From assembly GCF_001194135.2 (NCBI RefSeq), contig NC_068991.1, positions 72,030,065-72,094,064 of the forward strand: DNA of 64,000 bases, written 5' to 3'. The notes beneath the pieces are model-generated. The model ran no database searches and was not told the origin of the DNA. It saw nothing but the letters and a program-made list of their open reading frames with translations. This stretch comes from Octopus bimaculoides. Lineage: Eukaryota. Below are positions 14,144 to 50,045 of the stretch, in pieces. Each line of letters opens with the position of its first letter. The stretch's first letter is position 1. The position numbers and the translations under genes are program-made.

Positions 14144-14412
14144 CTGCTTTGAAAGTCAGCTCATCTGGAGCTGTTGCACTATAATCATACAGAGCGCGCA
14201 CTGGCACACCTGGTCGGTTATCATCCACCAATGTTGTGTCATCAAGCCAATCATCACTGTCGGGGTCACCAAACGGATTCCTACTATCAGCATCTTTGAT
14301 ATCAGTAGTAGTAGTAGTAGTAGGAGCAGTAATAGAAGAGTAAGGAGGAGGAGCAACATATGTTGAGCTGGAGTATATCGAATCAGGGTTATGATTGTCA
14401 GCAGTTTCAGCA
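14144..14412 (-). CDS. PACSIN: PACSIN exon, distal linker with NPF plus N-terminal half of SH3: AETADNHNPDSIY...SRNPFGDPDSDDWLDD...GVPVRALYDYSATAPDELTFKA(G)
   Basis: Acceptor ctttgcag (14413-14414) and donor CAG|GTGAG (14143). Phase 2 to 1, joins in frame to the 11160 exon. VRALYDY...DELxFKAG is the SH3 signature. Confidence 0.95.
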
Positions 14413-15169
14413 CTGCAAAGTTAACAGAAATAGTCGGTGGTGGAATTGTGGCAACAGGGAGACAAAAAAGAAGCAGGAGTGCAACAAGTTTTAAAAAATG
14501 GAAAGAAGAAGAAAAAAAAAGAAAATATTAATAAAGATTTAAAAAAAAAAAAAACCCTTAAATCTACAGAAAAACACAGGGATTTTCAAAGGAAAACATG
14601 CATATAAAGGATACATAGAAAAAGAAAAAAGGAAAATGGTTGACGAAATCACATGCAAAGCAACATGGAGAAATGACATTAAAATAAATGCAGAAAAAAA
14701 ATTGAAAATACAAACATATAAAGCACACTGATTCTAGTAATAAAACAATATATATACATATATATGTACACACACATGTATATATATATATATATATAGC
14801 TGTGCAATAGAAGGGGATTAGAAGTAATGGTGGTTTCCAGAACTTTCTCTTTTACATTTTTAAAACAATAATGAAGATTTAGACATTATTAACTGTTCAA
14901 ATTATTGAATTCCAATGTTTTTTTTTTTTTCCAGTTTCTAAAACATGAGAGGCGCAAAGCCACAAGTTTGAAGCAGAGAGAAGATTAACTGATTAAATTT
15001 ACACCAGGATTGGATGAAATGTGAAGTTTGACTTTAGTTGGACTTGGATTGAGAATGTAAAGAGCTGTAACTAAATACCACAAGGCATTTTGGACAACAT
15101 TCTAACAACTCTGTCAACCCATTTCAATGATGATGATGATTATGATGATGACAATAATAATAATGATAA

Positions 15170-15560
15170 TCCTTTCTATTATAGGCATAGGGCCTGAAAT
15201 TTGGGGGAAGAGGGCTAGTCAATTAAATTGACCCCAGTGCTTCACTGGTACTTAATTTATTGACCCTGAAAGGATGAAAGGCAAAATTGACCCAATGAGA
15301 TTTGAACTCAGAATGTAAAGAGCCAGGAGAAGTACTGCTTGGCACAATGATGATGATGATGATGATTTCAAATTTTGGCAGAAGTACATCAAGTTTAGGA
15401 GAGGGGACAAGTCAATTACTTGCCTGGAACTTTGTTTTACTGACCCTGAAAGAATGAAGGGGCAAAGTTAAACTCAGTAGGATTTGATCTCAAACTGGAA
15501 AGGCTTGGAACAAAATACTGCAAAACATTTTGCTCAATGCTATACCAATTCTGTCAAACC
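15170..15560 (-). mobile_element. Two tandem SINE family A copies separated by a (GAT)n tract
   Basis: Both contain gaccctgaaag(g/a)atgaa...ggcaaa and the B-box in reverse. Confidence 0.75.
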
Positions 15561-16225
15561 ACATCTATGATAATCGTTTCTAACCAAAGCACAAAGCCTC
15601 AGATTTGGTAGAATTGGTCACCAGTACTTGAACTTAGAATATAAACACCAGAACAAATACCACAAGGTATTTTTTACCCAATGCTTTAACAATTCAATCA
15701 ATTCAGCATCACAATACCAATAATAATATTTTAAAGAAATATTGATTTTGTCTGAAAACAAATATTTTGTCCAATCAAAACAGAAAAAAACGTTTGGTAG
15801 ATGAATCCAAAGTAGGAACAAATGATAGTAAAAATAAAAGAAACAAGTCAATGAAGATTTAGAGTATGACATCAAAATTTTACTTGATGGATTGTGAAAA
15901 ACACCAATAGGGAAAAAATTGGAGCCTTCTCAATCTATACTATCAAGAAAAGACGAATAATATTAAATTTAGAAGAAAATTGAAACTCATTTAATATAAC
16001 ATATTGGTAAGTTGCTGTATTGTAAAATGCAGCATGCCAATAAAATAATAATAATAATAATAATAAAAAGTACAAGAAAAACAGAGAAATATTGAAGCTA
16101 GTAAATTCTTGGAGCCAGAATACTTAAAGAAAAGCTTAGAATAGGAAAGCAAAAAGATAAGTCAACGGATTTGTTCAGGAAAGCATAAAAACTAAGCTGC
16201 ATTCTATTTGTAAACCAATTTTTAA

Positions 16226-16418
16226 TTAACTTTTTGCATTTAAATCCAGCCACATCAGGCCAAAATAGTCACCCTGTTTTATGTTCAAACTGGCCAAATC
16301 TGGCCTCTCACACCTATCCTACAACGTCATTTTAAAACATAAACAATCACATCCTCAATATCTTGAAGCTAGGAGCTACAATACATTTCACAAACTAATC
16401 TGAATGTTTAGGGGTTAA
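16226..16418. mobile_element. piggyBac-like MITE family F
   Basis: TTAA ends with degenerate TIR (ttaactttttgcattt / aatgtttaggggttaa); same internal sequence as the 19269, 36111 and 42098 copies. Confidence 0.7.
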
Positions 16419-17169
16419 TGTCATCATCATCATCAAATGCTAAGAAGCTGCAGAGGGAGAAACACCAGATCAACAAACTAAATGTAGCCTTACAATATAT
16501 GATCTTGATGTCCTACATTCTAAGGTCAAATCTTGATAGTCCAACTTTGCTTTTCATTTCTTTAGGGTCAACAAAGTAAGAAATCTCCAATATGAATTCA
16601 TGTCATTTTCATTACACTATACTTGTTCCTATATATTTTGTGGTCTTGTACCAAATGTATTTATCAATGCTTTCCATAGCAAATTGGTATTGAAAATATC
16701 ATCAAGACCAGGTCAGTGATAATTTTAATTTAAAATTCAAGCCCTAATGTCTGGTGTAGTGGTGAACATTTCAAAAAAACAGTAAATCTCCAGTGAACCT
16801 ATGAACCAGTTTCAAATCCTAGATGAAGCTATTTAGCCACAACTCCAATGAAATCTGAAGCCTTGCACTTAAACAGTGCATCATTTTGGCTTAATGATCT
16901 GTTAAATCTTTTATATCTACCTCATCACCAAATAATGCTTTCTAACGACAAAACAGCTTCCAGTTACTTGCAAGGTTCAGAACTGTTAAAAGCAAACAAA
17001 ACCAAGCCAAAACAAAACCAAAATCCTCTTTCTCTGCAACAGGAAAGTTAATATAATTCTTGTACTGAAAAAGAAAATGCTGATTGAAACAAACAACCTT
17101 TCTAAAATACTTGAGAAGTTTTGCATGTGTGTGTGCGTGCGTGCATGTATATATGTATGTACATATTCT

Positions 17170-17310
17170 GCACGAAGAATTTAAGTGTGCTGCTTGAAAG
17201 CACACTGCTAGTATAGTGAATGGGGAAAGCTTGGCTTGCAATGTTTGCAGCCGTGTATGCTTGTCGAGAGTAGGGCTCATTAGCCACCAACAGAGCCGCA
17301 AATGCAAAAT
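17170..17310 (+). mobile_element. RTE-type LINE 3' end (C-terminal zinc knuckle)
   Basis: Translates as LACNVCSRVCLSRVGLISHQQSR, the C-x2-C...SR(I/V)GLISH motif at the end of RTE ORF2. Confidence 0.75.
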
Positions 17311-19268
17311 ATAAGTTAGTCCTAGAGCGCACAATGTTCCTAAAAGTCAGCAATGGTCTTCCTTGGATATGAGTGGACGGCCATCATGTTGAAATGTAGA
17401 TAAAATAGGAAGGATTTGCGAGAGTCAAAAGCAAATGTAGTTCCAACAAGGAATCTGAAAAAGATGTCGGATTCAGTATATCACAGTACCAAACTTCAGT
17501 AATTTCTTTTGATTAGACACAAACTCAATTCATATGGCAAATGTTATAGGAAACTGAACTGATTCTGGTTTGGTATGGTGGACTCTCATACTGATGAAGA
17601 TTTTGCAACTTTGTGCTGAACAACCTAGACAGATGATTTGTTTTGTAGTGATCAACTGTACGTGGCATACATTAGCTCACTCCCTTCATAAAATTGCCAT
17701 TATCTGTACCACATGTCAGATATCAGTGATCATTGAGCAATGTGAAATGAAGTGTTCTGCTCAAGAGCACAAAGCACCACCTAGTCCCGGAATCAGAATC
17801 ACCATCTTGTGAACACGAGTGCAACAACCTAACCACTAGGCCATGTGCCTTAATAAATGAATATATTTATGTTCACTTTGTAGCCACATGGTTTCAATTT
17901 CATTGTAGGACACCCAGGGCAAGTGTCTTGAAATATAGCTTTGAGCCAACCAATGCCTTGTGAATTGCTAGACATAAACAGTATGGAAACTAGTTTATCT
18001 AAGTACGTATACGTGTGTGCGTGTGCGCAAATGCTGGTGTTTCTTGGCTTCACTAGTCACTGTCTGAATGAAACGGAAATGTAATGTTTACATTTCCCAT
18101 TGACAATACATCCTGTTACTCAGTGTTTTCAAAGACCAGCAGAATAATAATAAAAAAAAAAACAAGCAAACCCAAAAAACACCCTTACTTGAAAGACAAG
18201 TAATGGCTGGTGACAGGGAATGTGTCTAACTGTAATCTACTGTCTTGAATAAACTTCTGTCCAACCCATGCTAGCATGGAGAAAACAGACATAAAAATGA
18301 TCAAATGAGTGTGTGTTTGGTGTAATAGGTCCTTATCTCATTCAATGTTAGACTAATGATTGTAAGAAAAATCCACAAGATACAAGTAATACAACAGTTT
18401 CATTCCATCTGTTGTATGTGTTATATTTACAAGTCAGGTAGAAAAAAAAAATGATTGAATGCTATTAAGAGAAACCAGAAAAATTCCCCTTCCCTGCAAA
18501 ACACAATTTTTTTTCAAAATTCAAATAAGCAGAATTTGTTTAAATTCAAAATCATATCAAATATGTGTTATCAATGATATAGCAAAACATACATGAAAAT
18601 AACCTAAGCCTTAGACCTAAATGAAAAATATTTGCAAGCTTGTTATAAAATACAACAGTAGGCTTTTCAGACAGCTGACAATACAAAGAAGAATTACAAA
18701 GACGAAAAGAAAGGAAGAAAATAAGGAAGATCTAAAGAATCAAAGAGAAACAAAAAAAGTGTTGCATGCAGTTTCAAAAACGAGCTAACAGCAACATGCA
18801 CTGGCTGCAACTGTCATGACATCAGATTGAGGAAAGATAGATTCAAGTTAGACAAACAGATGACAAAAGGAAAAGAAAAATGAAATCAATCGGAGACAAA
18901 TTAATGGTTAAAATTTGGACAGAAAGCAGCTATATAAAATCTTTGGGAATAACAAAAAGGAACCTGCTCTTCATAGCCATTCCTATGCAGATATTTTAGG
19001 TTAATTATTATAAAATGAATTAAGAACTCTTCTAGCCAGAAAATTATTCTTTTCAGTGAAATTTGGAAAAAAAAAAACATAATAGATAATGATAAACATT
19101 GATATTAACCAACTTATCTAAAGAAAGGAAACAGTCCAAATAATCATTTAATATTTTTAAGCAAAGATACTACACTGAATATAAAGTTTATACATAGGAC
19201 AGATAGAATACAAACTGATGAAGAATAAATATAGAGACAGGTGTTTGCCTCCTTCTTTTTGCATTTTC

Positions 19269-19450
19269 TTAACTTTTTGGCATTTAAACGGGCCATATCA
19301 GGTTAAAATATTCTGTCCATTTCAGGTTGAAACTGGCCAGATCTAACTTCTCTCACCTGCCTGACAATGTCATTCTAAACTAAACAATCACATTATTGAA
19401 ACGTCGAAGAGCATAAAGATTTGAAACTAGTCTGAATGTTAAAGGGTTAA
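19269..19450. mobile_element. piggyBac-like MITE family F
   Basis: ttaactttttggcattt ... aatgttaaagggttaa. Confidence 0.75.
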
Positions 19451-19609
19451 GAAAATATATTGTCTGTCTAAACGCTAAGCTTATATACAATGTGTAACAG
19501 TAATTTCAGTGAATTGTAAAAGGAAAGACCATACATTACATATTGCATATGATATGCAAATAGTGAATCTAAGAAAACATTAAAGACGAGCAGCAGTATC
19601 TAGCCTTAC

Positions 19610-19646
19610 CTGGGTTTATAGAAAATGTAAGCAAAAGTCACATAAC
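19610..19646 (-). other. Candidate 37-nt phase 1-2 exon (GYVTFAYIFYKP) or recursive (AG|GT) splice site
   Basis: Consensus donor CAG|GTAAGG at 19610|19609, preceded by pyrimidine-rich cttttgcttacattttctataaacccag; upstream AG at 19647-19648. Confidence 0.35.
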
Positions 19647-19906
19647 CTGTAACATTCTTGAACAGATGAGCCCCTATACAAAACTTAAGGTACCCACATT
19701 CACTGCTAAATATATTAAGATGAAAACCTTAATGAACGAACGTCGTTATTTTGTTAGTCTTTGAGCATAAGTTTGTGTTAATTTAACTGCACAGTGTTAT
19801 AGTTCATGAGTGATGTGGATTTCACCAACGAAAACAGTTAGAGGAAAACAGACCTGAGGGTAAAAAGATTATTGTATAAGCATGATAAGAAATAACATTG
19901 TGTTTT

Positions 19907-19963
<57 letters not shown>

Positions 19964-20002
19964 TGCATATGCTCTTAAATTAATTAGCTACAACCAGATT
20001 TG

Positions 20003-20043
<41 letters not shown>
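19907..20043. repeat. Two (AT)n microsatellites
   Basis: Direct observation. Other AT/AC tracts at about 10250-10500, 33110-33157, 44146-44235, 44740-44790, 52096-52120 and 60740-60790. Confidence 0.9.
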
Positions 20044-20053
<10 letters not shown>

Positions 20054-20315
20054 CTTTCCCCACCTCCCAGCACAAATTCATAAATAACAGTCAGAAGCAA
20101 ATCCATTAGAGAAAGTACAATGGAAATAAGGACACGTGGTAATCCTGTTGTGATTGTAGGTAAAAAGCAGGGGGGGCGAGTCTTGGTTTGTACTGATGTC
20201 GTTTGTTTGCAAGGTCAGATCTGGAGCGGTGCAAATGGACAGCTGATACAGGTTTACAACAACGGGAAGTTAACTAACTGCCTGGGGGTGTAGGATAGTA
20301 CCTACCTGGTAGAGA

Positions 20316-21132
20316 TCAATCAGAGAAATCAGATAAGGACTCAGTTTCAACACTGCGATAATAACCCTCAATCGACTGATCTGTGTTGGATCTGTTCAAA
20401 ACTCCATAGTCAGTCGATCCTTTTCGGCTACCTGTATATGGAGAAGGTTGATTCATAGGGCTCCTATTATTGTTCAGGTTCTTATTTGGAGTGCCTATAT
20501 TTCTGTTGCCACCAATTCCTTTGTTACCTCCAGCAGGCTTCCCAAGTATCATATCTCGAATTTCTTGGTCAAAGTTATCAGGTATTCCTCTATACTGGTT
20601 CTTTCTGATTGGGACTGGCGATGGAGAGCTAGGTCTCCTCTCTTCTATGTGAATTGCAGGTGCGTTTTGATTCATCAGGGGTCTCATCATTGGGTTAAGT
20701 GGACCCTGAGGCTGTGGGGTCATGCTACCACGTCGATTTGCTGGACTTAATTTTGGCTCATTTATTACTGGTGGTCGTATACCAGGTGGACCCATACCAG
20801 GTGGACCCATACCAGGTGGGCCCATACCGGGTGGACCCATACCAGGTGGTCCCATTCCGGGTGGTCCCATTCCGGGTGGGCCCATGCCAGGTGGACCCAT
20901 GCCGGGTGGACCCATACCAGGTGGACCCATGCCAAGTGGTCTCATGCCAGCTGGACCCATGCCAGGTGGTCTCATGCCACGGGGACTTGAAAGGTGGGAA
21001 CGTGGATCCATTCCATATTTAGCTGGTCCAGCACCACATCCTTGAGGCCCTAAAGGTCCCATACCTGGAGGTGACTGAGTAGTTGGGTTGATTTTTATGC
21101 CAGTGTTCAAAGGTCCTTTCTGCCTGGGTGAG
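20316..21132 (-). CDS. PACSIN: Large Pro/Gly/Met-rich PACSIN exon (SPRQKGPLNTG...(GMGPP)n...ETESLSDFSD*) ending in TGA
   Basis: Long pyrimidine tract tccttctttgttccttcctctatttaccttaatag at 21133+. The phase-2 entry coincides with the reading frame of the 306-aa ORF (about 270 open codons); synonymous variation among the repeat units. Confidence 0.75.
20770..20979 (-). repeat. Coding 15-bp tandem repeat, 14 units (10 GMGPP plus 4 variant units)
   Basis: Plus-strand unit ggtggacccat(a/g/t)cc(a/g), repeated. Confidence 0.95.
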
Positions 21133-21683
21133 CTATTAAGGTAAATAGAGGAAGGAACAAAGAAGGACTTAGAAAGCTTGAAAAACATCATTGCTATGAT
21201 TGGATATAAAAATTCAATTTCATGTAAAACTAACAATTGCTATTTATTTTAATCATAACCTACACAATCCTGTAAATTATTAAGTGATCCAGATAAGAAT
21301 CATTTAATAATCTATTGGCTGTAACAAACAACCTGAAGAAAGTCTGTTAGTGTTGTGTAAGCTTAAAGATCAGCTCCTTGTAAAATAAGAATGGGTTAAA
21401 TTAAAAAACTTTTCTTCTTCTTTGCACTAAGCTAGCAAATCATACCCCCTCCCCGCCACCACTTCAGAAGCACTAAAACTGAAGAGCTAAGAAGAAAAAT
21501 TCTAATAATTTAATTTATTATTTTTTCTTTTAAGTTAAGACCCGTCTAATCTATAATGGCAAAAGTCTGCATAGGAAGAGGTATGTTGTTGACAGGAACT
21601 ATCATTTCATGCCAAGATGCAGTAAATAAAATGTTTTTTTAGTAATTTAAATTATAGACACTGAACTGCAAACCTATCATTAC

Positions 21684-21791
21684 TTTTTCTTTTGAGATGC
21701 ATCTTTCACCAAGTGTTTAGCATCACTATGTATATCTTCGTCGTCAGATTCCTCTCCAAAAGGATTGAGACTTTCATCGTAGCTCTCATGC
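21684..21791 (-). CDS. PACSIN: PACSIN linker cassette exon with NPF: HESYDESLNPFGEESDDEDIHSDAKHLVKDASQKK
   Basis: Acceptor cttttatag, donor AA|GTAATG; 108 nt, symmetric phase 2-2; NPF followed by an acidic cluster, typical of PACSIN linkers. Confidence 0.85.
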
Positions 21792-24700
21792 CTATAAAAG
21801 GTACAGGAGCTATGAAACTGTTCAAATTCAATGAAGTTGAGAGCTAAAAGTGTTGTATTTTTTATTTTTGGAGGGAAGGGAATGTGGAGCCAAAGTAAAA
21901 CTGAACACACACACACACACATACACGTACACACGCCATTCCATGCATTTTAAGATAAATTATTAGATCTAAAAAAAAAAACAAGAATGTTTTTAAAAGT
22001 GGATGTTAGGTTTCTTTGAGAGGATATTTTTCTGATAGGTATGGGCAATAAATATGAGAGAATTAATAAAACAAAAACAACAAACGTGAAAAAGAAAAAG
22101 GCAAGAAAATAGCGCCTCGTGTGTTTGAAAAAAAGCTCACCAAAATTTCAATTTGTTTACAGAATCAATAGTTATTAAACAAATAAACAGATATTAGATT
22201 GCTTTTGCAAGAGGAAACACATAAACACGCAAAAAAATACAATAATAAAATTGGAAGAAAAAAAATAGAGATATCAATAAACAATATCAAATACATGTGT
22301 TGTTTATCAAATTCATACAAATAGAAACAGTTTAGTATGAGGTATTTGTTGGAACCTGAAATATATTTCGTATGAATGCTGAAAATAAAATGAAATTATT
22401 AAAGAAAAAAAAAAGGCGCAAGAAACTGCAAGTTCAATCAGGACGCTCAACTGATTAGACAAAATAACAATTTTCCCCTTAGATTAAACCATTATTCTCA
22501 TTTTTTTATCCTTCCTAATACACGAAAATTAGTTGTAAATCAACATTTGATCTAAAAACATCTTTGCACTAAAGTTAACTCCCATCCTATACACATACAT
22601 ACACACACAAAAGCAATGTTAGACTCCTCATTTAATGGCGACTGCAAATTGAAGAAAAACCCCCCAGAAAACTCATAAAATGAAGGGTTGGACAAAATCC
22701 TTAGCTGTTCCCACTTAATGGAAACAATCTTATTGCTACTGTAAATTAATATTAAACTAGATCAATCCCGTCTTGCAGATATCGATAAACTCACCATTTT
22801 CAATAACTCTCTTCTAAACCTTAGAGTACATTGTCTGTTTATACTGGTTTTTTGTTTTGTTATTTTTGTCCCTAAGCAGGAAAACTTATTTCCTACCTTT
22901 ATATTGGAAGTGGGAAGAGGGGTAAAATTTTGATTGAATATTACTTAAACTTTCTGATATCAAATCACCAGAGAAGCTCCCCTGGTTCTACAATACAAAC
23001 TTCATTGTTAAAAATTATCCAAAAAGCTTTCATTAACGTTAACTTTTGTTCCAAACACCAATAACAATCATTTCACTAAATTCCTTATTATTTTCAAAAT
23101 TAATTGAAACAAAGGCAGAATATAGCAAGAAAAGTGTTAATTTATAATTCTGAAAAACGGTCAGTATTTCTGCTTTGTTAGTTTATTATTAATTCAAGAG
23201 TTTTTGTCTTGCGAACAACTTGATGACCTCATTAGTGTCAGTGAAAAAGTACAGAGTACATTCTGTAAAGTGGTTGGTGTCAGGAAGGGCTTCTAACCAA
23301 AGAAGCAATTCCAAAACAGACATTAGACCTGTTGGATCATGCCAAAGCATCTAACCCATACCAGCATGGAATACAGATGCTAAATGATGATGAATGATTC
23401 TGTGTATAATCTAATTATTCCAGAAATCTTAATCTAACTGCTTACCTTAATCCTCCACCATCTTTCATTATGTGTGACAATATAAGGAAAAACATATCCA
23501 ACACTTACGCAACATTTTTTCTTTCTTTCCATATTTAATTTGCATTCACAAATCTGTTTCTAAACAATTATCATTGATCACAAATACATTATTTACAAAA
23601 GTCTCTATTCTAAGATGGATGGCCTTAATCAGCACAGGACATTCATACTTCAGGCCAAGTGCAAAAGGATCTTAAGATATTTTCCAAAAGAACATTGATT
23701 TATACTACAGAAATAAAGATCATTCCATGCCTACATTTCCAATTTGGCACAGATTAAGGAGATATTTTTAACAACCATTTTCCAATATATCCAATTGCTC
23801 ATTTAGATCTAGCTCTCAGGTCAACTATAAATATTTCACTTCAAAATTAAACTGCGTATTCTTGACCACTATCTTAGATTTTTCATATGATGCTACTATC
23901 AAGGCAGTATTGATCCACATTGATGGGTATAATTTATTTAAAGGCTGCAGGTAATAAAATAGATAAACAGCTTAGCTATAAATCGACTTGCTACTGGTCC
24001 TGTTATGGCAAAATGGAGTTATAAAGTGTGTGTGTGCACACACACACACAAAATGAACTTTACAAAATTTGAATTAAATCTTTAAATTATTAAAGGCAGA
24101 TACATTTTACTATTTGTAGATGGTGTAAAACATCAAATCGTTTTTGACAGACTGACATACTAAAAGATTTCATTATTAGTTTTTACCGTTTTATTCAATG
24201 TGTTATTTAACACTTTCGATATGTCCCCTAATTTATATGATACGCCCTTCCCATTTTATGTGATCTAAATTAGAACTTCCTGTCCAAACATCATATCAAT
24301 TTATTTTGCAAACACTAGCTTTGTACTGACCACATTATTTCACTAAATTTTTCATTATTTTCAAAATGAATTAAAGCAAAGGCAATGTTCCTCAACAGAA
24401 ATACTAATAACAAAGAGATAACCACATTAATTAGAATTTCTTTAATCAGTTGTCATTAAAATTTGAAGAAATCTGTTGAATAGCTATAAATTACTGGCAT
24501 TTCCCCCCTCATAGAATAGACATAATAGGAGAAAAATAAATTGAATAAATCAAACTAAAACTGTTTCAATATTTCAAAGTTGATATCAAATAACCTCAGA
24601 CATTCATTCAAATGATCTATTCTAAAGGAAGGGGCCTCTTAGACTCTAACATAAGGGTCCATCACAGACTGTGACACTAATGGAGACTTTACAAACTATC

Positions 24701-25810: not shown

Positions 25811-25849
<39 letters not shown>

Positions 25850-25894
25850 AAACTTGTCTAAAAAGAAACCAGACTCTTAAGACCGCACAACCAC

Positions 25895-26789: not shown

Positions 26790-27154
26790 NNNNNNNNNNN
26801 NNNNNNNNNNNNNNNNNNNNNNNNNNNNNNNNNNNNNNNNNNNNNNNNNNNNNNNNNNNNNNNNNNNNNNNNNNNNNNNNNNNNNNNNNNNNNNNNNNNN
26901 NNNNNNNNNNNNNNNNNNNNNNNNNNNNNNNNNNNNNNNNNNNNNNNNNNNNNNNNNNNNNNNNNNNNNNNNNNNNNNNNNNNNNNNNNNNNNNNNNNNN
27001 NNNNNNNNNNNNNNNNNNNNNNNNNNNNNNNNNNNNNNNNNNNNNNNNNNNNNNNNNNNNNNNNNNNNNNNNNNNNNNNNNNNNNNNNNNNNNNNNNNNN
27101 NNNNNNNNNNNNNNNNNNNNNNNNNNNNNNNNNNNNNNNNNNNNNNNNNNNNNN
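26790..27154. other. Assembly gap (N run)
   Basis: N bases. Other gaps: 33158-33853, 47841-48135, 52121-52804, 56655-56991, 58529-58538. Confidence 1.
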
Positions 27155-30483: not shown

Positions 30484-30714
30484 ATTTTTTGTTTGGTTGC
30501 AACAGTGGCATTCTGTTCGATTGCGACAGGGGCATTCTGCTCAATTGCGACAGGGGCATTCTGCTCGATTGCGACAGGGGCATTCTGCTCGATTGCGACA
30601 GGGGCATTCTGCTCAATTGCAACAGTGGCATTCTGTTTCCCTTTGCTATCTGCCGGATCCACTTCTGACACCTCATCAAAAGGATTCCTTTTGTTCTCCT
30701 GTTGTGGCTCTTCC
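30484..30714 (-). CDS. PACSIN: PACSIN linker cassette exon with NPF and an 8-aa tandem repeat: EEPQQENKRNPFDEVSEVDPADSKGK(QNA[P/T]VAIE)x5 QNATVATKQK
   Basis: Acceptor tttttttag, donor AT|GTAAAA; 231 nt, phase 2-2, open frame with NPFDE. Confidence 0.8.
30499..30642 (-). repeat. Coding 24-bp tandem repeat, 6 units (QNAPVAIE)
   Basis: Plus-strand unit ggggcattctgctc(a/g)attgcgaca, near-identical copies. Confidence 0.95.
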
Positions 30715-33157: not shown

Positions 33158-33868
33158 NNNNNNNNNNNNNNNNNNNNNNNNNNNNNNNNNNNNNNNNNNN
33201 NNNNNNNNNNNNNNNNNNNNNNNNNNNNNNNNNNNNNNNNNNNNNNNNNNNNNNNNNNNNNNNNNNNNNNNNNNNNNNNNNNNNNNNNNNNNNNNNNNNN
33301 NNNNNNNNNNNNNNNNNNNNNNNNNNNNNNNNNNNNNNNNNNNNNNNNNNNNNNNNNNNNNNNNNNNNNNNNNNNNNNNNNNNNNNNNNNNNNNNNNNNN
33401 NNNNNNNNNNNNNNNNNNNNNNNNNNNNNNNNNNNNNNNNNNNNNNNNNNNNNNNNNNNNNNNNNNNNNNNNNNNNNNNNNNNNNNNNNNNNNNNNNNNN
33501 NNNNNNNNNNNNNNNNNNNNNNNNNNNNNNNNNNNNNNNNNNNNNNNNNNNNNNNNNNNNNNNNNNNNNNNNNNNNNNNNNNNNNNNNNNNNNNNNNNNN
33601 NNNNNNNNNNNNNNNNNNNNNNNNNNNNNNNNNNNNNNNNNNNNNNNNNNNNNNNNNNNNNNNNNNNNNNNNNNNNNNNNNNNNNNNNNNNNNNNNNNNN
33701 NNNNNNNNNNNNNNNNNNNNNNNNNNNNNNNNNNNNNNNNNNNNNNNNNNNNNNNNNNNNNNNNNNNNNNNNNNNNNNNNNNNNNNNNNNNNNNNNNNNN
33801 NNNNNNNNNNNNNNNNNNNNNNNNNNNNNNNNNNNNNNNNNNNNNNNNNNNNNCCACCTTAATAAGAA

Positions 33869-33964: not shown

Positions 33965-33967
<3 letters not shown>

Positions 33968-36891: not shown

Positions 36892-37059
36892 CTGCCAAAA
36901 GGATTTTTATCAATAGCTTGCAGGCCACATAGCGCATGAGCAGACAAAGACTCAGAGATTTTAATCATGGCATTTGTGGCATGGCTTGTCCACCTTCCAG
37001 TAAAGGACTTTGATATGTTGACAACGTAAGAGAGTTTTGATTTCACACCATTAGTAAAT
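36892..37059 (-). CDS. PACSIN: Candidate PACSIN cassette exon ending in NPF: FTNGVKSKLSYVVNISKS...LQAIDKNPFG
   Basis: Strong acceptor tattttcacag; phase-2 entry is the open frame; weaker donor CAG|GTTTGA directly after NPFG; 168 nt, 2-2. Confidence 0.5.
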
Positions 37060-39544: not shown

Positions 39545-39791
39545 AACAACAACCTGTTTCTTGTGTCTTTACTGCCCACAAGGGACTACACACAGAGGGG
39601 ACAAACAAGGACAGATAAACGGATTAAGTCGATTATATCGACCCCAGTGCCTAACTGGTACATATTTTATTGACCCCGAAAGGATGAGAGGCAAAGTTGA
39701 CTTCGGTGGAATTTGAACTCAGAACGTAGCGGCAGACGAAATACCGCTAAGAATTTCGCCCGGCGTGCTAACGTTTCAGCCAGCTCACCGC
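39545..39791 (-). mobile_element. Full-length, little-diverged SINE family A
   Basis: Retains CpGs; complete head to tail. Confidence 0.9.
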
Positions 39792-40129
39792 CTGTTTCTG
39801 TCCCCACATTCATACTGGAACCCCTCAATATTTTGCATGAAGCCTCCTCTCACTTGTGCTGGGGTTACATAAAACCACTAGTACTATCTGTAAAGTGGTT
39901 GGTATTAAGAATGGGCATCCAGCCATTGAAACCATGTTAAAACTCAAATGCTGGAGTAAGATGTGGTCCTCTGGTCCATTGGATCCTGTTGGACTGACCA
40001 ATCCATGACAGCATGTAAAGCAGATGTGAAATATCTTATACACACACACACACCTATCAGGCCAAGTAAAGTCATAGTCATGGCAGATACTGGTATCACG
40101 CAAATGGTCTGTAAAAGCATCCATTATAC

Positions 40130-40285
40130 TCTCAGAATGGTTAGTGTTAGGAAGAGCATCCAGCTGTAGAAACCCTGCCAAATCAGACTGGAGTCTGGTG
40201 CAGCCTTCCAGCTTGCCAGCCATGGTCAAACTGTCCAACCCATTCCAGCACGGACAACGGACATTAGATGATGATGATGATGATG
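40130..40285 (+). mobile_element. SINE family B with (GAT)n tail
   Basis: tggttagtgttaggaagagcatccagctgtagaaac ... acattagatgatgatg. Confidence 0.8.
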
Positions 40286-40572: not shown

Positions 40573-40721
40573 TTTTGGTAATTGGACCCTGCAGGAGGAT
40601 GGTCTGAATTGGCAGCATAACTTTCACGGTTGTGTTTGATACCTGTTATGGTGATGCCTTCATTGGAACCAAATGTTTGCTTTTTTGTTTTGGTGATATT
40701 GTGCAGTTCTGGGGAGTATTC
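40573..40721 (-). CDS. PACSIN: PACSIN post-F-BAR exon: EYSPELHNITKTKKQTFGSNEGITITGIKHNRESYAANSDHPPAGSNYQ
   Basis: Acceptor ttttgcccag, donor AA|GTAAGA; phase 0 to 2. Resembles the conserved (E)EWSADL...K...DGVTLTGI segment after WPQFE in PACSINs. Confidence 0.9.
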
Positions 40722-41965: not shown

Positions 41966-42000
<35 letters not shown>

Positions 42001-42097
42001 CGAGTACATAAGAATACATATACAATATCCAAAATATTTCTTCTAATTTCAACTGACCTGTTCTCAAACATGGTATTCTTTCTGAATGATAGTTCCT

Positions 42098-42657: not shown

Positions 42658-42851
42658 TATGAAGGGGTGCTGAAAAGTTCCTGGCTTTAAAGGGTATCAT
42701 GAAAAGCCTGGTTGGAGGCCTGACTTTCTGAGTTATTTTACAAGGCTTAGAAAAACTGAAGGACTGCTGCAATAAGTGAATAAAAATCATAACTGATCCT
42801 CCTATATTTTTCTCTTACCAAAAGCCAGGAACTTTTCAGCAACCCCTTGTA
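42658..42851. mobile_element. Tc1/mariner-type MITE with TA ends
   Basis: TIR aggggtgctgaaaagttcctggcttt / aaagccaggaacttttcagcaacccct; partial second copy at about 44584-44690. Confidence 0.85.
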
Positions 42852-43689: not shown

Positions 43690-44070
43690 GGTGCGTTAAC
43701 TGGAAAAAGGACTGCTAATTCCTCATTACATAGGAAATGCCTCTGACATCAAAGAGTTTATTAAAGAGCATCCACTTGTGACTACATGTGCTCTCAATAT
43801 ACTTTCCTATTATTGCTGTAAGATTAAAGCCATGTTCAATCATCTTTGGTGAGTGAGATACTGTCTGACAATTGTCAGATGGAGGATTACCGCAGGACAA
43901 ATTAAGGTGAGCTGGCATTCATGCTATACAGACACTGAGCTTGGCATTTGGCTTTAAAGATGTTGTGAAGAGGGAGATCAATGTCTTTGCCATTAATCAA
44001 AATGAATAGTAAGGAAACAGCTGCAGAGAGATTCTTGGAGTTGGCACGCTGCCATGGACGAGAAATCAAT
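43690..44070 (-). mobile_element. Possible decayed LINE endonuclease fragment
   Basis: Interrupted frames loosely resembling APE-domain motifs (CLY...SSP; ...LFPVNAPT); weak. Confidence 0.3.
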
Positions 44071-44734
44071 AAGGAACACTATAATTGAAGTGTGGCAAGC
44101 ACACAAACAAAACACCTCATACATAAATACACGCATTGGTGGGAGCACGCGTGTGCATGCACGTGTGTATGTGTGTGCGTGAGTGTGCATGTATGTGTGT
44201 GTGTGTATGTGTGTGTGTGTGTATGTGTGCACGTATACAGGAATACAAAGCAGCACAGTCGGGTTACTTTAACCTTTGTTTAAGCGTAGGTAAGATCAAT
44301 ATGTGCACCGATGTTACATGTAGGTGCAAATGAAATAGATAAATGTATTATTGTGACATTCGTAGATGAAATAGAGAATTTTATATACACATACACACAG
44401 ACATATATATGCACAAACATATACATCATCATTGCTTCAGTGTCTATGCTCGCATGGGTCAGAGGGAATTCATTGAGGCAGATATTACATGCATGTAGTT
44501 ATGGATAAAATATATACATACTGGTGTTACATGTATGTAGGTGCAGATAAGACAGATGTATGAATATATATATATATATATATATACAAGGGGGTGCTGA
44601 AAAAATCCTGGCTTTAAGGGTATTGTGAAAGGCCTGATTGGAGGTCCAACCTTCTAAGTTCTTTTACAGGGCTTCGAAAAACTGAATTAATGTACGACGT
44701 CAAGAGATACATGAACATGCACACACAGACATAC

Positions 44735-44792
<58 letters not shown>

Positions 44793-46059
44793 TATAACCA
44801 TCATTAAATATGACTGAGGGTGTTGTAAAAACCTACATTGCTAGAAATAAGAGCTAAACACTCTAATACTGCAGTCGAAGCATGTAATTGTATACCTACG
44901 TGCTGATAGAGACCATAAATGCCTGAAAAGCAGCAGTCAAGATATTTCCAGACTGCTGCCTAAAAAATTATTTAACACACACACACAACAGGTCTCTTTT
45001 TGGTTTCCATTTACCAAGTTTAGCTCACAAGGCTTTACATGGCCTGCCTCTCTAAGTAGAACACACTTTCCCAAGGTGTTGTATAGTGGGACTGAACCTG
45101 AAACCACGGATGAGATTTGAATCCCAGGCCTAAATACTGCTTGGCATTTTGTTTCCGTGACTCAACTGCCACAAACAATTCTTGAAATGAATCGATATCA
45201 AAAGCATAAAGAACGAGGGGCAGAGATGTCACAGTTTATGTCTAACAGATGTTGAAATACATATTCTGTGTTGATAATGATCAATACTGAACATAAAGGA
45301 AGGTAGTAACACTGAATAAGAACTGATTATAGAGGAAAGGAAATTCTGAACGACAAGCTCTATAGTACTGGTAGCATAATAAAATGGATCTAGTTCATGC
45401 TGTAAAGTGGTTGGTGATAGAAAGGGAATTCAATCATAGACGCTATGTTAAAAATAAAGGGAAAGTACAAAGGAAACATGGGCTTTGAAAGCTGCATCAC
45501 ACCTATTTGCCAAGAAGGACAGTGACCCTGGATAAGAATTGATATAGGGCAGAAGGGACTTTTTTTGTTTTTATCCAGTTACTGTTTTTTCTCTGGTGAT
45601 GTTGACATGCTAAACTGTATCCAGTTCATGCTGAAAGAGGATACACAACAAAAGAGTCAGCCAGTTTTTTTGTTGTGTGTGCATGCTCTGTGATGAAATG
45701 GAGGATTGTAGTGGATGGTGAGACAAACGACAGTAGTGACTAGGGAGGTAAAAAGACTGATGAGATGAGGGATCACAGTGAGTAGCAAGACAAGGGACCA
45801 TGGAGGATAACAAAACAGAACTGGTGGGTGGCAAGGTGACAGACTACACTAAATAATGAAATGAAGGACCATGAGGTGATGAGACAGAGGGTCAGAGTGG
45901 TCAAAAGGCAAAAGACTGTGATTAGTGGTAAGGCAAATTAATAGAACCACCTAGAAAGAAATTCAGTGAGATACATTTTAAAATATCATGAGAAACTTTG
46001 GTCAAAATTTGTAAAACTTTTCAGATGCATATATACATAATTGAGGGCTTGAAAATACC

Positions 46060-46560
46060 AAACTAGTGCTGTAAAGGTACTTGAAATAATAGCTTGAGGG
46101 AAGGAGTGTTGGGACCTGACAGTACATTCCATTCTTCTTGTTTCTTTTGTTTTTGTTTTCTCTGTTGCATGCCAAAGTTTGGAACAATCTTCCACATACA
46201 AATAACAACACATTATTCCCATCAGTGTTCCAAAGAGTAGAGGTAGAATGTGCTGAGGTGTTCCTGGTAGCTCAGAATTTTGACATGTTTTTCACTTTTT
46301 GTCATGTACAATATATGTCATTTACTGTTGTATCTGATGTCTAGATTTTGTTGGAGATGACAGATATTATCGTCCGTCTTGACTGTATATCCACTGAGAG
46401 TGGCTAATTGTATATTTTTTGTCAAGGCCAACATTATGAGAACCAAAAGGAGGCCCAGAATGGTGCTTTGTGACAGTTCATTTCTTACCATAGACATTCT
46501 AGACAGAAGACCATTAGTCATATTTAAATAGAAGGGTTTACATAACACATTCTTTTTATA
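46060..46560 (-). mobile_element. Decayed CR1/L2-like RT fragment
   Basis: SQSTILGLLL (PQGSILGPLL), KTDD (FADD), and ...VICMWKIVPNFG. Confidence 0.6.
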
Positions 46561-47670
46561 GTTTGGTACATAAGGTTGACTGCAGTAATACCACATATTT
46601 GCCAGTTAAGTTAAAAGTTGCTTTTAACCAGCAAAGTTCACAAGTCACTTTTAAAGATGCTTTTGTTTAGCATGTCCAAATTTTCTCAAAATATATTGGA
46701 TAGCAATTATAATAAATCTGACTAAACACTTCTAGTTTAGAAAAGTCAGTGTATATAAAATATTTTCCTGGGAATTCACAGACCAAAATTAGAGGTACTA
46801 CATGTTATATATGAGGGTGTATTATACATAAATAAACATGGTATATAAATAGAAAAGCAGTTAAAAAATTCATTTTAAGATTAAAAAACAAATGTTAGTC
46901 ATATTTCAATGTTAAAGAGATTTTATTGCAGTTAGTTTCAAATAACAAAGGAAATACAATAAATAGTACAACATGGTTAAAACTACTTTCAACAAATATA
47001 CTACAAGAGTTGTATGAGGAAATGAGCTTCATTTGTTTGGAAGTTGTCTCTTGCCTTCTCTCACTCAATCACACACACACACTCTCTCTCTCTCTCTTTC
47101 ACAGGAACATAATGGTGAAGTAAATTAAATGTAGGCTGCTGTAATCCATAGCTCAGTAATTTCTATCTCTGGACAGGGAACTTGTTTGTTCATTATTATC
47201 TATCAAGGGTAATTATAGCATCCTGGGTTACAGTGGCTTGGCCGAGCATAAGAGTTAAGTACCAAGGAAATCCAACAGTGTTTATAGCTGTATTGGCTGC
47301 TTCTGCTGGTGGCCAAATTATTTTAAATGTCAGTAAAATATTTGAAACTGAAAATTAGGTATGATAGCGATAGCAAGGAGAGAAACTATCTAATGTTTTA
47401 TACAAAGCCATTCATTCTCTGATCAGAATGTACACTTGTTTATATAATTTTCCTCCTCTTACAATAACTTGATGGCCTCCTTTCTTTATTTTATTGTACT
47501 GTCTTGACAATGTAGTCTCCTATGGCCCCTAATTATTAAATTTCACGAGTGGAAAGATTAAACTCAGAATGCAAAGACCCAGAAGAAATGCTGCTAAGTA
47601 TTCTAACCAAGGTGTTAACAATTCTGCCTGCTCGATGCTTTAACGATAACAATCCTTTCTGCTGTAGGCA

Positions 47671-47840
47671 CAAGGCCTGAAATTTTGGAGGAGGGGGGAT
47701 AATCGATCACATTGATCCCAAGGTCCAGAATTTTGGGGGAGGGGGGATAGTCAATCACATTGACCCCAAAGCCTAAAATTTTGGAGGAGGGGGGATAATC
47801 GATCACATTGATCCCAAGGTCCAGAATTTTGGGGGAGGGG
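47671..47840. repeat. 48-bp minisatellite derived from the SINE family A tail, alternating A/B units, running into a gap
   Basis: Units start at 47671, 47719, 47767 and 47815; sequence matches the family A tail (aaggcctgaaattttgg...gggg...gatcacattgacccc). Confidence 0.85.
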
Positions 47841-48269
47841 NNNNNNNNNNNNNNNNNNNNNNNNNNNNNNNNNNNNNNNNNNNNNNNNNNNNNNNNNNNN
47901 NNNNNNNNNNNNNNNNNNNNNNNNNNNNNNNNNNNNNNNNNNNNNNNNNNNNNNNNNNNNNNNNNNNNNNNNNNNNNNNNNNNNNNNNNNNNNNNNNNNN
48001 NNNNNNNNNNNNNNNNNNNNNNNNNNNNNNNNNNNNNNNNNNNNNNNNNNNNNNNNNNNNNNNNNNNNNNNNNNNNNNNNNNNNNNNNNNNNNNNNNNNN
48101 NNNNNNNNNNNNNNNNNNNNNNNNNNNNNNNNNNNATTGTAAATAATATATTAAAATTTTCATTTATAACTTAAATATTTATGTTTGTCCATTTGCAAAA
48201 GGTTAAAATAATAATTAGTGAAACTTTGTAAACTACTATCATGTATGATTCATTGCAACAAAATATTCT

Positions 48270-48451
48270 TTTCTACTCTAGGCATAAGGCTTGAAATCTT
48301 GGGGGAGGAGGCTGGTTGATTAGATCGCCCCCAGTATGCAACTGGCACTTAATTTATCGACCCCGAAAGGCAAAGTCGACCTTGGCAGAATTTGAACTCA
48401 GAACAGAAAGACAGACGAAATACCGCTAAGCATTTCACCTGGCGTGCTAAC
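48270..48451 (-). mobile_element. SINE family A
   Basis: Matches the family consensus. Confidence 0.85.
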
Positions 48452-50022
48452 TCGAAACAAAATGTTAACACAGGAATGCTAAGTTTACAGTCAAAAAAAG
48501 GTAAATTAGTTTATAGAAAAAAATCTACTCCATCTCTTTTGTAAAAAATTGAATAATTTATAAATATATCTATAAATTTTTTTATAAATGTAATACAAAG
48601 GCACTTGTTTGTTAAAAGTACATAAACATGCATCATACATACATACATACATACATACATGAATTGACTTTTAATGAGCAATTTAGCAATAAATATGATA
48701 TTGCTTACTAACATAGGCACAAAGCCAGACAAAGAGTATAGCTGCTTACATCAACCCAGTACTTGCCTGATACTGTATTTTATCAACCCTGAATGGATGA
48801 AAGGCAAAACTGACCCTGATATGGAAGGCTCAAATTCATAACATAATGACATATTGAAAACAATACAAAGTAGCTTGTCTGTCACTCTATTGATTTTGGT
48901 AACACATCTCCCTTACCAATAAATAATATATTAACAACTATAAACAGAATTAAGACTAGTCCGATCCAGATGATTTTAACACTTGACTCATCTTGAAAAA
49001 TAAATAAAATTCCTCATAAAACATAAAACAACAACAACAAAATGTTGATTTCCACAATCATAACAATCCCCAAGTTCATATAATGCCTAATATGGGCATA
49101 TGCCTACTCAACGTATAAGGAAATTAAATGGAATAAATGATGATGAACTTTTGAACAAGACCAAGTTTATTCAGAATGACTAAGAATGAATGTTCACATA
49201 TCCGTGAACAAAGAAAGGTCTTGGAGTTAGAACTTTTGATGGCTGATATACGGTCTTCTAAGATACTAAACCTTGGTTGTAAATATTGGTAGTGCTTTCC
49301 TTGCTTGGAAAGGTGACACACTGCATTCTGCAGCACTTATTATACAGGCTCCGTAAAATAAATACATGGTGTGAATTCTGTATAACCTTCATTTTTCTAT
49401 CTGTTACATTAAAACTTATGATTAACTTGGAAAAACAAAAAATGACAAGTTTATAAAAATATATGGTAGTGAAATTTAAGTTGATACATAATTTCATATA
49501 ATTCCTTAAACCTTTTCCTTTTAAATAGCAAAAAAGTATGAAAAAATAACAAAGATAACTAGCATAGTTTCTATATAATATTACAGATTTTTTTAAAAAT
49601 CACCATTACATTTAACTGTTTTTCTAATTTAAATAATTTTTTAAAAAATTGAAATTCGATTAAAAAAGAAAAAAACTAACATGAGATTTCCAGAGAACAT
49701 AAAAACTACAATTATTTAATGATCACATACCATAAAGCTAAAATAATTTGTACATCCTTCTTAATACAGAGAAAACTTTAAAAAACTTACATTCTTGAGA
49801 TATATTATAAAGATTATTTTAACTATGATACAAAGACAAAAAGATCTACATGATAACAACAGCCAGGTAAGTAAGCAAGGCTTTCTTTTTTTTTTTTCAT
49901 CAAATTTATACCAATATCTCCAAGCAAACTGTCCAGCTCACAGTTTCATAGGCAGCACCAGGCAGTTAGTGAAATGAGAGTTTGTACAAGACTTCACACT
50001 AGCATTTCCACGAAAGACTCAC

Positions 50023-50045
50023 TCAATTTGATCCGGATGGTAGTC
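50023..50045 (-). CDS. PACSIN: Candidate 23-nt PACSIN microexon (DYHPDQI-E/D), phase 0 to 2
   Basis: Acceptor ttctgtttttcacttcag and consensus donor GA|GTGAGT; DYHPD resembles EYSPE of the 40721 exon. Confidence 0.6.

What the first reader, a model, noticed from the sequence alone, without database searches (positions are those of the whole stretch)
14144..50045. Modular phase-2 cassette array builds a PACSIN linker with a tunable number of NPF motifs
Seen: between the post-F-BAR exon (ends phase 2) and the SH3 exon (starts phase 2), the exons at 36892-37059, 30484-30714 and 21684-21791 are symmetric 2-2, and each carries exactly one NPF. A fourth NPF is in the SH3-proximal exon. Any subset splices in frame, giving 1-4 NPFs and very different linker lengths over about 26 kb of intron. 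Established: PACSIN NPFs bind EHD-family EH domains, which favour NPF followed by acidic residues (here NPFDEV, NPFGEESDDED, NPFGDPDSDD), and vertebrate PACSINs vary NPF number by splicing. Inference: a one-motif-per-exon combinatorial dial for EHD avidity and F-BAR-to-SH3 reach, possibly tissue-specific.
Basis: partly seen in the sequence, partly recalled or inferred. Interest (0 to 1): 0.8.

Follow-up and report, generated by a model that had tools for sequence, protein, structure and literature searches.

The report
Octopus PACSIN linker: alternative NPF exons
This is the 3' half of the Octopus bimaculoides PACSIN/syndapin gene: two of the three proposed one-NPF cassette exons are real, already annotated and used in every combination in sister species, while the third has no support, so this is an accurate reading of an ordinary, known kind of splicing.

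Summary
The window holds the 3' part of the Octopus bimaculoides PACSIN gene on the minus strand. The window's exon peptides match RefSeq XP_014778554.1 exactly.

**Confirmed**
- Cassettes 30484-30714 and 21684-21791 are real exons.
- Gene models in O. vulgaris, O. sinensis and O. bimaculoides show neither, either or both cassettes included, giving 1, 2 or 3 NPFs.
- The 21684 cassette (SYDESLNPFG plus an acidic run) is ancient. It is present in long isoforms and absent from short ones in oysters, clams, abalone, snails and an annelid. Cuttlefish RNA contigs show both inclusion and skipping.

**Not supported**
- The 36892-37059 "cassette" is in none of the 14 cephalopod models or RNA contigs read here.
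- It matches no fetched protein, and its codon usage is no better than that of chance intronic ORFs.
- So 4 NPFs is unsupported.
- Coordinate 50045 marks no known exon. The F-BAR exons lie outside the window.

- An 827-nt exon (20306-21132) with PPGMG repeats and an in-frame stop.
- It gives an F-BAR-only isoform with no NPF and no SH3, and it is conserved in cephalopods.

The three assembly gaps lie in introns. The EHD-avidity function remains an inference by analogy with the long and short forms of vertebrate PACSIN2.

The parts
40573..40721 (-). Post-F-BAR exon (149 nt; EYSPELHNITKTKKQTFGSNEGITITGIKHNRESYAANSDHPPAGSNYQ + 2 nt 'AA'). It is constitutive in every model read here.
   Evidence: Splice sites and phase were read. 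The peptide is found exactly in XP_014778554.1 and XP_052827969.1. It is homologous to cuttlefish, gastropod, bivalve and annelid PACSINs.
36892..37059 (-). It is most likely a chance intronic ORF, not an exon.
   Evidence: It is absent from all 14 cephalopod models and RNA contigs read here, and no 12-mer of it occurs in any fetched protein. There is no tblastn match in the gastropod locus or the cuttlefish transcripts. Its codon log-odds is -0.059 per codon, and 16% of 234 chance intronic ORFs score as high, whereas every verified exon beats all 234. The peptide is basic and hydrophobic, with no acidic run after the NPF. It is not a repeat copy.
30484..30714 (-). NPF cassette A (231 nt, phase 2-2): EEPQQENKRNPFDEVSEVDPADSKGK + (QNAPVAIE)-type repeats. 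So far it has been seen only in Octopus species.
   Evidence: The peptide is found exactly in XP_014778554.1. Orthologs occur in O. vulgaris CAI9729812/13 and O. sinensis XP_029643072.2. It is skipped in O. vulgaris CAI9729810/11. The junction residues K (AA+G), M (AT+G) and I (AT+T) match the predicted phases.
30497..30635 (-). 24-nt tandem repeat (5.8 copies, 93% matches) inside cassette A. It encodes six 8-residue units.
   Evidence: TRF. The number of units is the same in the O. bimaculoides, O. vulgaris and O. sinensis proteins.
21684..21791 (-). NPF cassette B (108 nt, phase 2-2): HESYDESLNPFGEESDDEDIHSDAKHLVKDASQKK. This is an ancient lophotrochozoan cassette.
   Evidence: The peptide is found exactly in XP_014778554.1. 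It is included in some Octopus models and skipped in others. The cuttlefish homolog is seen in gene model CAE1254400.1 and in RNA contig L011. The SYDESLNPFG motif is in long isoforms of about 20 mollusc and annelid species and absent from short ones. Phases are the same in the Gigantopelta locus.
20306..21132 (-). Alternative stop-containing exon (827 nt). The acceptor (aatag|C) is in the same phase as the cassettes. It encodes NSPRQKGPLNTG.., a (PPGMG)n repeat and a conserved tail ..YYRSVETESLSDFSD. The stop TGA is at 20316-20318, and the donor CCAG|GTAGGT follows. The product is F-BAR plus a Pro-rich tail, with no NPF and no SH3.
   Evidence: The sequence was read. The models are O. vulgaris CAI9729814, O. 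sinensis XP_036362971.1 and O. bimaculoides XP_052827969.1. Homologs at 92% and 51% identity on two other Logan contigs end with the same ESLSDFSD-stop-~10 nt-GT. There is no AATAAA/ATTAAA in the 1 kb after the donor.
20779..20969 (-). 15-nt tandem repeat (12.7 copies) encoding PPGMG units inside the stop-containing exon.
   Evidence: TRF.
14144..14412 (-). SH3-proximal exon (269 nt). It starts with 1 codon base, carries the constitutive NPF (SRNPFGDPDSDDW) and encodes the first half of the SH3 domain (VPVRALYDY..).
   Evidence: Pfam SH3_1 E = 3.9e-14 on the joined exons.
11054..11160 (-). Last coding exon: the second half of the SH3 domain ([34 protein letters not shown]) plus the stop TGA at 11054-11056.
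26790..27154 (.). Assembly gap inside the intron between cassettes A and B.
   Evidence: No residues are missing between these exons in the models of other Octopus assemblies.
33158..33853 (.). Assembly gap inside the intron upstream of cassette A, flanked by (AT)n and (TAA)n.
47841..48135 (.). Assembly gap inside the intron upstream of the post-F-BAR exon. That intron is more than 23 kb long.
50023..50045 (-). 23-nt AG..GTGAGT stretch (DYHPDQIE) at the finding's upper coordinate. It is not an exon of any known isoform.
   Evidence: The sequence was read. No PACSIN residue maps above 40721 in the window.

Best explanation
The window carries the last exons of the Octopus bimaculoides PACSIN/syndapin gene.

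**Shown**
- Between the constitutive post-F-BAR exon and the NPF+SH3 exon lie two genuine cassette exons, 30484-30714 and 21684-21791.
- Both cassettes are in the same symmetric phase, and each encodes one NPF followed by acidic residues.
- Alternative splicing includes neither, either or both. The resulting proteins have 1, 2 or 3 NPFs and linkers of about 126 to 239 residues.
- A third alternative exon (20306-21132) uses the same acceptor phase but carries a stop codon. It yields an F-BAR protein with a PPGMG-repeat tail, no NPF and no SH3.

**Inferred**
- More acidic NPFs means more or stronger binding of EH-domain partners (EHD/RME-1/Past1-type). This parallels the long and short forms of vertebrate PACSIN2.
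- The SH3-less form would drop both dynamin/N-WASP-type and EH-domain contacts.

**Rejected**
- The proposed 36892-37059 exon is most likely a chance intronic ORF.
For: **Identity of the gene**
- Every window exon peptide is an exact substring of XP_014778554.1.
- Pfam finds an SH3 domain on the joined exons. The same proteins carry F-BAR (PF00611).

**Phases**
- Read directly from the sequence.
- Confirmed by the junction residues in the models: N, K, M and I.

**Alternative use**
- O. vulgaris CAI9729810 skips both cassettes, -811 has +21684, -812 has +30484, -813 has both and -814 has the PPGMG exon.
- O. sinensis X2 has both cassettes and X1 has the PPGMG exon.
- In cuttlefish, six RNA-seq assemblies carry the skip-all form. 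One carries the junction from the post-F-BAR exon into the cassette.

**Conservation**
- The Gigantopelta locus has identical phases, and its X1 and X2 isoforms differ by this cassette.
- Long and short isoforms in about 20 lophotrochozoans differ by SYDESLNPFG.
- The PPGMG exon is conserved, including the position of its stop.

**Coding signal**
- All six real exons beat 234 of 234 chance ORFs on codon usage. The 36892 candidate does not.

**Established background**
- PACSIN NPFs bind EHD EH domains, and EHD EH domains prefer NPF followed by acidic residues (PMC13282721).
- PACSIN2 long and short forms differ in NPF number (PMC9285741).
Against: - No octopus RNA reads were examined. The isoform evidence for Octopus is gene models, whose transcript support I could not inspect.
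- For O. bimaculoides itself only the both-included model and the PPGMG model were seen.
- Inclusion levels, tissue pattern and EH-domain binding are untested.
- The orthologous DNA for the 36892 region could not be obtained, so rejection of that exon rests on absence from models and on composition.
- The PPGMG isoform has its stop upstream of two exon junctions. It could be an NMD target rather than a stable protein-coding mRNA.
Confidence: 0.85

Rival explanations
1. One reading: three cassettes including 36892-37059, giving 1 to 4 NPFs.
For: - The 36892 candidate has fair splice sites (acceptor at about the 93rd percentile, donor about the 91st) and the right phase.
- An NPF inside a phase-compatible chance ORF is itself uncommon. 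My rough estimate is about 3%.
Against: - It is in none of the 14 cephalopod models or RNA contigs read here.
- No homolog was found.
- Its codon usage falls within the chance distribution.
- The peptide is basic and hydrophobic, unlike the acidic real cassettes.
- Three other NPF 9-mers on the same strand in the same interval sit in plain junk.
Confidence: 0.06
2. Both cassettes are essentially constitutive in octopus, and the skipped forms are annotation noise or minor mis-splicing. There is then no regulated dial.
For: The O. bimaculoides and O. sinensis SH3-containing models seen here carry both cassettes. I saw no read counts.
Against: - O. vulgaris has separate models for all four combinations.
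- Argonauta, cuttlefish and a further Logan cephalopod contig (88% identical to cuttlefish) show skip-all forms, six independent RNA assemblies in cuttlefish.
- Short and long isoform pairs recur across molluscs and an annelid.
Confidence: 0.1
3. The cassettes are real and alternative, but their main effect is not EHD avidity. They might change linker length or charge, SH3/F-BAR autoinhibition or phosphoregulation, or recruit other EH-domain proteins (Eps15 or intersectin type).
For: - Cassette A adds a 48-residue repeat unrelated to NPF.
- The cassettes are rich in Ser, Asp and Glu.
- PACSIN activity is known to be controlled by SH3/F-BAR autoinhibition and by phosphorylation of the central region (PMC9285741).
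Against: The only element invariant across phyla in cassette B is LNPF plus an acidic run. That is the EHD-preferred motif (PMC13282721).
Confidence: 0.2

Closest known systems
Vertebrate PACSIN2/syndapin II long and short splice forms
   Same: - Both are F-BAR / NPF linker / SH3 proteins.
- An alternatively included linker segment changes the number of NPF motifs (PMC9285741, citing Qualmann & Kelly 2000).
- The NPFs bind EHD EH domains (PMC13282721).
   Different: - Octopus has two independent cassettes, giving four SH3-containing combinations and 1-3 NPFs.
- It also has a stop-containing Pro-rich exon.
- The cassette sequences show no detectable homology to the vertebrate insert; this was only looked for incidentally.
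- The octopus protein is the single invertebrate-type PACSIN.
Lophotrochozoan PACSIN isoform sets in RefSeq/ENA (e.g. Gigantopelta aegis X1/X2, Crassostrea, Haliotis, Owenia long/short)
   Same: - The SYD(E/S)SLNPF(G/A) + acidic cassette is homologous.
- The position and splice phases are the same.
- The cassette is present in long isoforms and absent from short ones.
   Different: - Octopus adds a second, unrelated NPF cassette with a 24-nt tandem repeat.
- Cephalopods add the PPGMG exon.
- Oysters have other non-NPF inserts (RKISFDGF.., KSYTNYTYFS), and these have no match in the window.
RefSeq model XP_014778554.1 (O. bimaculoides PACSIN)
   Same: It uses exactly the exons 40573-40721, 30484-30714, 21684-21791, 14144-14412 and 11057-11160.
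   Different: It shows only the both-included form. It contains neither the 36892 exon nor the PPGMG exon.

Membership tests
PACSIN/syndapin | C-terminal SH3 domain | tested here: met
   Pfam SH3_1 E = 3.9e-14 and SH3_9 E = 3e-13 on the joined window exons.
PACSIN/syndapin | N-terminal F-BAR (FCH, PF00611) domain | tested here: inconclusive
   No F-BAR exon lies in the window. However, the RefSeq proteins that contain the window's exon peptides exactly belong to clusters with PF00611, and they align full-length to cuttlefish PACSIN. The feature is met for the gene but is not in this DNA.
PACSIN/syndapin | NPF motifs in the variable linker between F-BAR and SH3 | tested here: met
   NPFDEV, NPFGEESDDED and NPFGDPDSDD are in validated exons.
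Alternatively spliced NPF cassette (PACSIN2 long/short type) | The exon is frame-preserving and carries an NPF | tested here: met
   231 nt and 108 nt, both 1 nt + codons + 2 nt, with one NPF each.
Alternatively spliced NPF cassette (PACSIN2 long/short type) | Both inclusion and skipping are observed in transcripts | tested here: met
   - For 30484 and 21684: O. vulgaris, O. sinensis and O. bimaculoides gene models.
- For the 21684 homolog: also cuttlefish RNA contigs.
- This is not read-level evidence in O. bimaculoides itself.
Alternatively spliced NPF cassette (PACSIN2 long/short type) | The same criteria applied to the 36892-37059 candidate | tested here: not met
   It is frame-preserving and has an NPF. 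But it is in no model or RNA contig, has no homolog, and its codon usage is at chance level.
EHD-binding NPF motif | NPF followed by acidic residues | tested here: met
   Sequence only: D/E at +1 to +8 in the three validated motifs. The rule is taken from PMC13282721.
EHD-binding NPF motif | Physical binding to an EHD EH domain | not testable with these tools
   This needs a pull-down, ITC or NMR with the octopus EHD EH domain.

The most novel reading that the evidence does not exclude
Octopus PACSIN is a multi-state splicing switch.
- Two independent NPF cassettes set EH-domain valency: one is ancient and pan-lophotrochozoan, the other is Octopus-specific with a fixed six-unit repeat.
- A cephalopod-specific PPGMG exon produces an F-BAR-only subunit.
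- By dimerising with full-length PACSIN, that subunit would place a PPG-methionine repeat tail next to the partner's SH3 domain. From my own knowledge, not tested here, such a tail resembles a GYF- or SH3-type ligand, like the tails of SmB.
- The result would be a built-in modulator of syndapin signalling in the cephalopod nervous system.
Probability: 0.1. Interest if true: 0.55.

Novelty: new member of a known kind. Interest (0 to 1): 0.3.

Why it matters
- The finding shows that a tool-free reading recovered the exact exon borders and phases of two real alternative exons.
- Biologically it extends a known vertebrate theme, PACSIN2 long and short forms differing in NPF number. It points to one conserved lophotrochozoan cassette (SYDESLNPFG plus an acidic run) and an Octopus-specific second cassette.
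- That offers a natural 1-, 2- and 3-NPF series for testing how NPF valency controls EHD recruitment.
- The practical gain is modest. The exons are already in public annotation and the function is inferred.
- The unreported PPGMG stop-exon isoform is the less expected element.

Tried and rejected
- **tblastn with human PACSIN2 typed from memory.** It found only the SH3 exons, so it served as a lead only.
- **Two protein searches with window-derived linker and SH3 peptides.** They returned only fragments plus cuttlefish and Gigantopelta, and missed the Octopus proteins. A later search with the cuttlefish protein found those proteins. Negative results are therefore not evidence of absence.
- **Genomic DNA of the O. 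vulgaris ortholog.** This was meant to test conservation of the 36892 region. The cuttlefish gene model was not on record.
- **Exact look-up of 10 ORFs around 36892.** The aim was to reach orthologous Logan contigs. None were in the collection.
- **Cassette A as a duplicate of cassette B.** BLASTP gave no alignment, so the idea was dropped.
- **36892 as part of a dispersed repeat.** There was no repeat match.
- **Pfam on the PPGMG exon.** No family was found.
- **Rfam on the whole window.** Nothing was found.
- **Oyster-type extra linker inserts.** They have no match in the window.
- **Two literature searches.** They found no paper on cephalopod or mollusc PACSIN isoforms.

Full report
**1. 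What is in the sequence**

The gene runs on the minus strand. I read the claimed places directly.

- All three proposed cassettes have AG/GT borders: 36892-37059 (168 nt), 30484-30714 (231 nt) and 21684-21791 (108 nt).
- Their lengths are divisible by three.
- Each is open in the frame '1 base + codons + 2 bases', and each encodes exactly one NPF.
- The SH3 domain is split over 14144-14412 and 11057-11160. Pfam gives SH3_1 E = 3.9e-14.
- The 14144-14412 exon begins with one codon base and carries NPFGDPDSDD.
- The upstream constitutive exon is 40573-40721. It begins cag|GAATAC and ends CAAAA|gtaaga, that is, with two codon bases.

**2. Is the geometry more than chance?**

On its own it is not.

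- At the splice scores of the weakest claimed exon there are 10 phase-compatible AG..GT open stretches of at least 60 nt in the interval. Seven encode hydrophobic junk.
- NPF-coding 9-mers occur nine times per strand in the window, against about 6.5 expected.
- Six lie on the minus strand within the interval, and three of those sit in obviously non-coding ORFs.

External evidence was therefore needed.

**3. Identity and validation**

Searches with window peptides first gave only fragments, a cuttlefish PACSIN model and Gigantopelta isoforms. Searching with the full-length cuttlefish protein then returned the octopod proteins.

- Every window exon peptide is an exact substring of O. bimaculoides XP_014778554.1. 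This holds for the post-F-BAR exon, 30484, 21684, SH3a and SH3b.
- The junction residues are those predicted by the phases: K = AA+G, M = AT+G, N = AA+T.
- The window is therefore the 3' part of the O. bimaculoides PACSIN gene, and two of the three cassettes are real exons.
- No F-BAR residue maps to the window. The upstream intron exceeds 23 kb, and the O. vulgaris ortholog spans 196 kb.
- The finding's upper coordinate 50045 marks only a 23-nt AG..GTGAGT stretch that is in no model.

**4. Alternative use**

O. vulgaris has separate models for each combination:

| Model | Exons included | NPFs |
|---|---|---|
| CAI9729810 | neither cassette | 1 |
| CAI9729811 | 21684 only | 2 |
| CAI9729812 | 30484 only (junction ..KQK-I-AETADNH) | 2 |
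| CAI9729813 | both, then read-through into the intron (..QKKK-stop) | 2 |

- O. sinensis XP_029643072.2 and O. bimaculoides XP_014778554.1 carry both cassettes, giving 3 NPFs.
- Argonauta, a further Logan cephalopod contig (88% identical to the cuttlefish protein) and cuttlefish give skip-all forms. In cuttlefish that form sits on contigs from six RNA-seq assemblies.
- One further cuttlefish RNA contig joins the post-F-BAR exon to the homolog of the 21684 cassette. It then runs 10 nt into an intron that starts gtaatgatagg, as in octopus.

**5. Age of the cassettes**

- In the gastropod Gigantopelta the locus has the same phases: ..ATCAG|gt, then a cassette starting with 1 base and ending with 2, then an SH3 exon starting with 1 base.
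- Its isoforms X1 and X2 differ by the SYDSSLNPF cassette.
- Its isoform X3 uses an internal donor that shifts the frame and loses the SH3 domain.
- Across 43 lophotrochozoan isoforms, long forms carry SYDESLNPFG plus an acidic run and short forms lack it. This covers oysters, clams, abalone, limpets, pulmonates and the annelid Owenia, which has two copies and 3 NPFs.
- tblastn of those linkers onto the window hits only the 40721 exon and the 21684 cassette.
- Cassette 30484 has been seen only in Octopus. It contains a 24-nt tandem repeat with the same six units in three species. It shows no similarity to the 21684 cassette.

**6. The 36892 candidate**

- It is absent from all 14 cephalopod models and RNA contigs read here. 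No 12-mer of it occurs in any fetched protein.
- It has no match in the gastropod locus or in the cuttlefish transcripts.
- I trained a codon log-odds score on the other exons plus the cuttlefish CDS. It placed all six validated exons, each left out in turn, above 234 of 234 intronic ORFs of at least 40 codons.
- On that score the candidate reached -0.059 per codon, and 16% of chance ORFs did as well.
- Its peptide is basic and hydrophobic (it contains W and C). Its NPF sits on the last codons with no acidic run within the exon.
- It is not a repeat copy.
- I could not obtain orthologous DNA. A rare, species-specific exon therefore cannot be excluded, and I give it about 6%.

**7.

Between cassette 21684 and the SH3 exon lies an 827-nt exon, 20306-21132.

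- Its acceptor aatag|C is in the same phase as the cassettes.
- It encodes NSPRQKGPLNTG.., a 15-nt (PPGMG) tandem repeat, and a tail ending ..YYRSVETESLSDFSD.
- The stop TGA is 10 nt before a strong donor, CCAG|GTAGGT.
- O. vulgaris CAI9729814 and O. sinensis XP_036362971.1 join it directly to the post-F-BAR exon and end at that stop. The product is F-BAR plus a Pro-rich tail, with no NPF and no SH3.
- A full HMMER scan found two further homologs, at 92% and 51% identity. They lie on contigs whose upstream sequence is intron-like and whose exon ends the same way: ESLSDFSD, stop, about 10 nt, GT. The exon and its stop are therefore conserved in cephalopods.
- There is no poly(A) signal in the next 1 kb. 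The exon is probably internal, and the mRNA may be NMD-sensitive.
- XP_052827969.1 reads through (..SDFSD-C-AETADNH). That implies a non-canonical TG|AT donor at 20317 and looks like a model artefact.

**8. Assembly gaps**

- 26790-27154 and 33158-33853 lie in introns between cassettes. 47841-48135 lies in the upstream intron.
- The first is flanked on one side, and the second on both, by simple repeats.
- Models from other Octopus assemblies join the same exons without extra residues.

**9. Mechanism**

- Shown: frame-preserving cassettes that change NPF number from 1 to 3 and linker length from about 126 to 239 residues, plus an SH3-less alternative.
- Established: PACSIN NPFs bind EHD EH domains, these domains prefer NPF followed by acidic residues, and PACSIN2 long and short forms differ in NPF number (PMC13282721, PMC9285741).
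- Inferred: inclusion tunes EH-domain valency and F-BAR-to-SH3 reach. Tissue specificity is untested.

**10. Verdict**

- The real part is already in public annotation and follows a known principle.
- I rate it a new member of a known kind, of modest interest.

Noticed in passing
window 20306-21132 (-): An 827-nt alternative exon with a (PPGMG)n repeat and a conserved ..ESLSDFSD-stop. It gives an SH3-less, NPF-less PACSIN isoform and appears to be cephalopod-specific. The PPGM repeats resemble GYF/SH3-type proline ligands; that resemblance is from my own knowledge and is untested.
   Followed up: yes
window 20304-20321 (-); protein XP_052827969.1: This RefSeq model reads ..SDFSD-C-AETADNH. It bypasses the TGA through an implied TG|AT non-canonical donor, which makes the exon 816 nt and in frame. 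It is probably a gene-model artefact.
   Followed up: partly
window 30497-30635 (-): A 24-nt coding minisatellite encoding six QNAPVAIE-type units. The unit number is identical in O. bimaculoides, O. vulgaris and O. sinensis, so it is stable rather than polymorphic noise.
   Followed up: partly
window 21673-21683 (-) and L011 1213-1223: The first 11 intron bases after cassette B (gtaatgatagg) are identical in octopus and cuttlefish. Models and contigs in both (CAI9729813, CAE1254400.1, L011) read through this donor to an immediate stop. This could mean intron retention or a regulated weak donor.
   Followed up: partly
L002 about 22420-22470 and 30660 (Gigantopelta aegis): Isoform X3 uses an internal donor in the NPF cassette (CCTAAA|GTGACA). 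This shifts the frame in the SH3 exon (PHADSL-stop) and gives another SH3-less product in a distant mollusc.
   Followed up: partly
window 62964-63215, 63668-63919, 5847-6046, 57911-58061, 40111-40280; and 39653-39797, 2739-2883, 55684-55824, 48340-48451, 7991-8128 and others: Two SINE-like dispersed repeat families lie in the introns and flanks, in both orientations. One is about 250 bp and the other about 145 bp, with at least 12 copies. There is no Rfam match.
   Followed up: partly
L002 about 4850-9100 (Gigantopelta aegis intron 1): A long tandem array whose translation repeats part of the next F-BAR exon (..GPEYGTCLGGWK..). It looks like a satellite that has captured an exon fragment.
   Followed up: no
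tool behaviour, versus 38: Word-indexed protein searches with window-derived peptides missed Octopus proteins that contain those peptides exactly. A search with the cuttlefish ortholog found them. Negative results from such searches should therefore not be read as absence.
   Followed up: no
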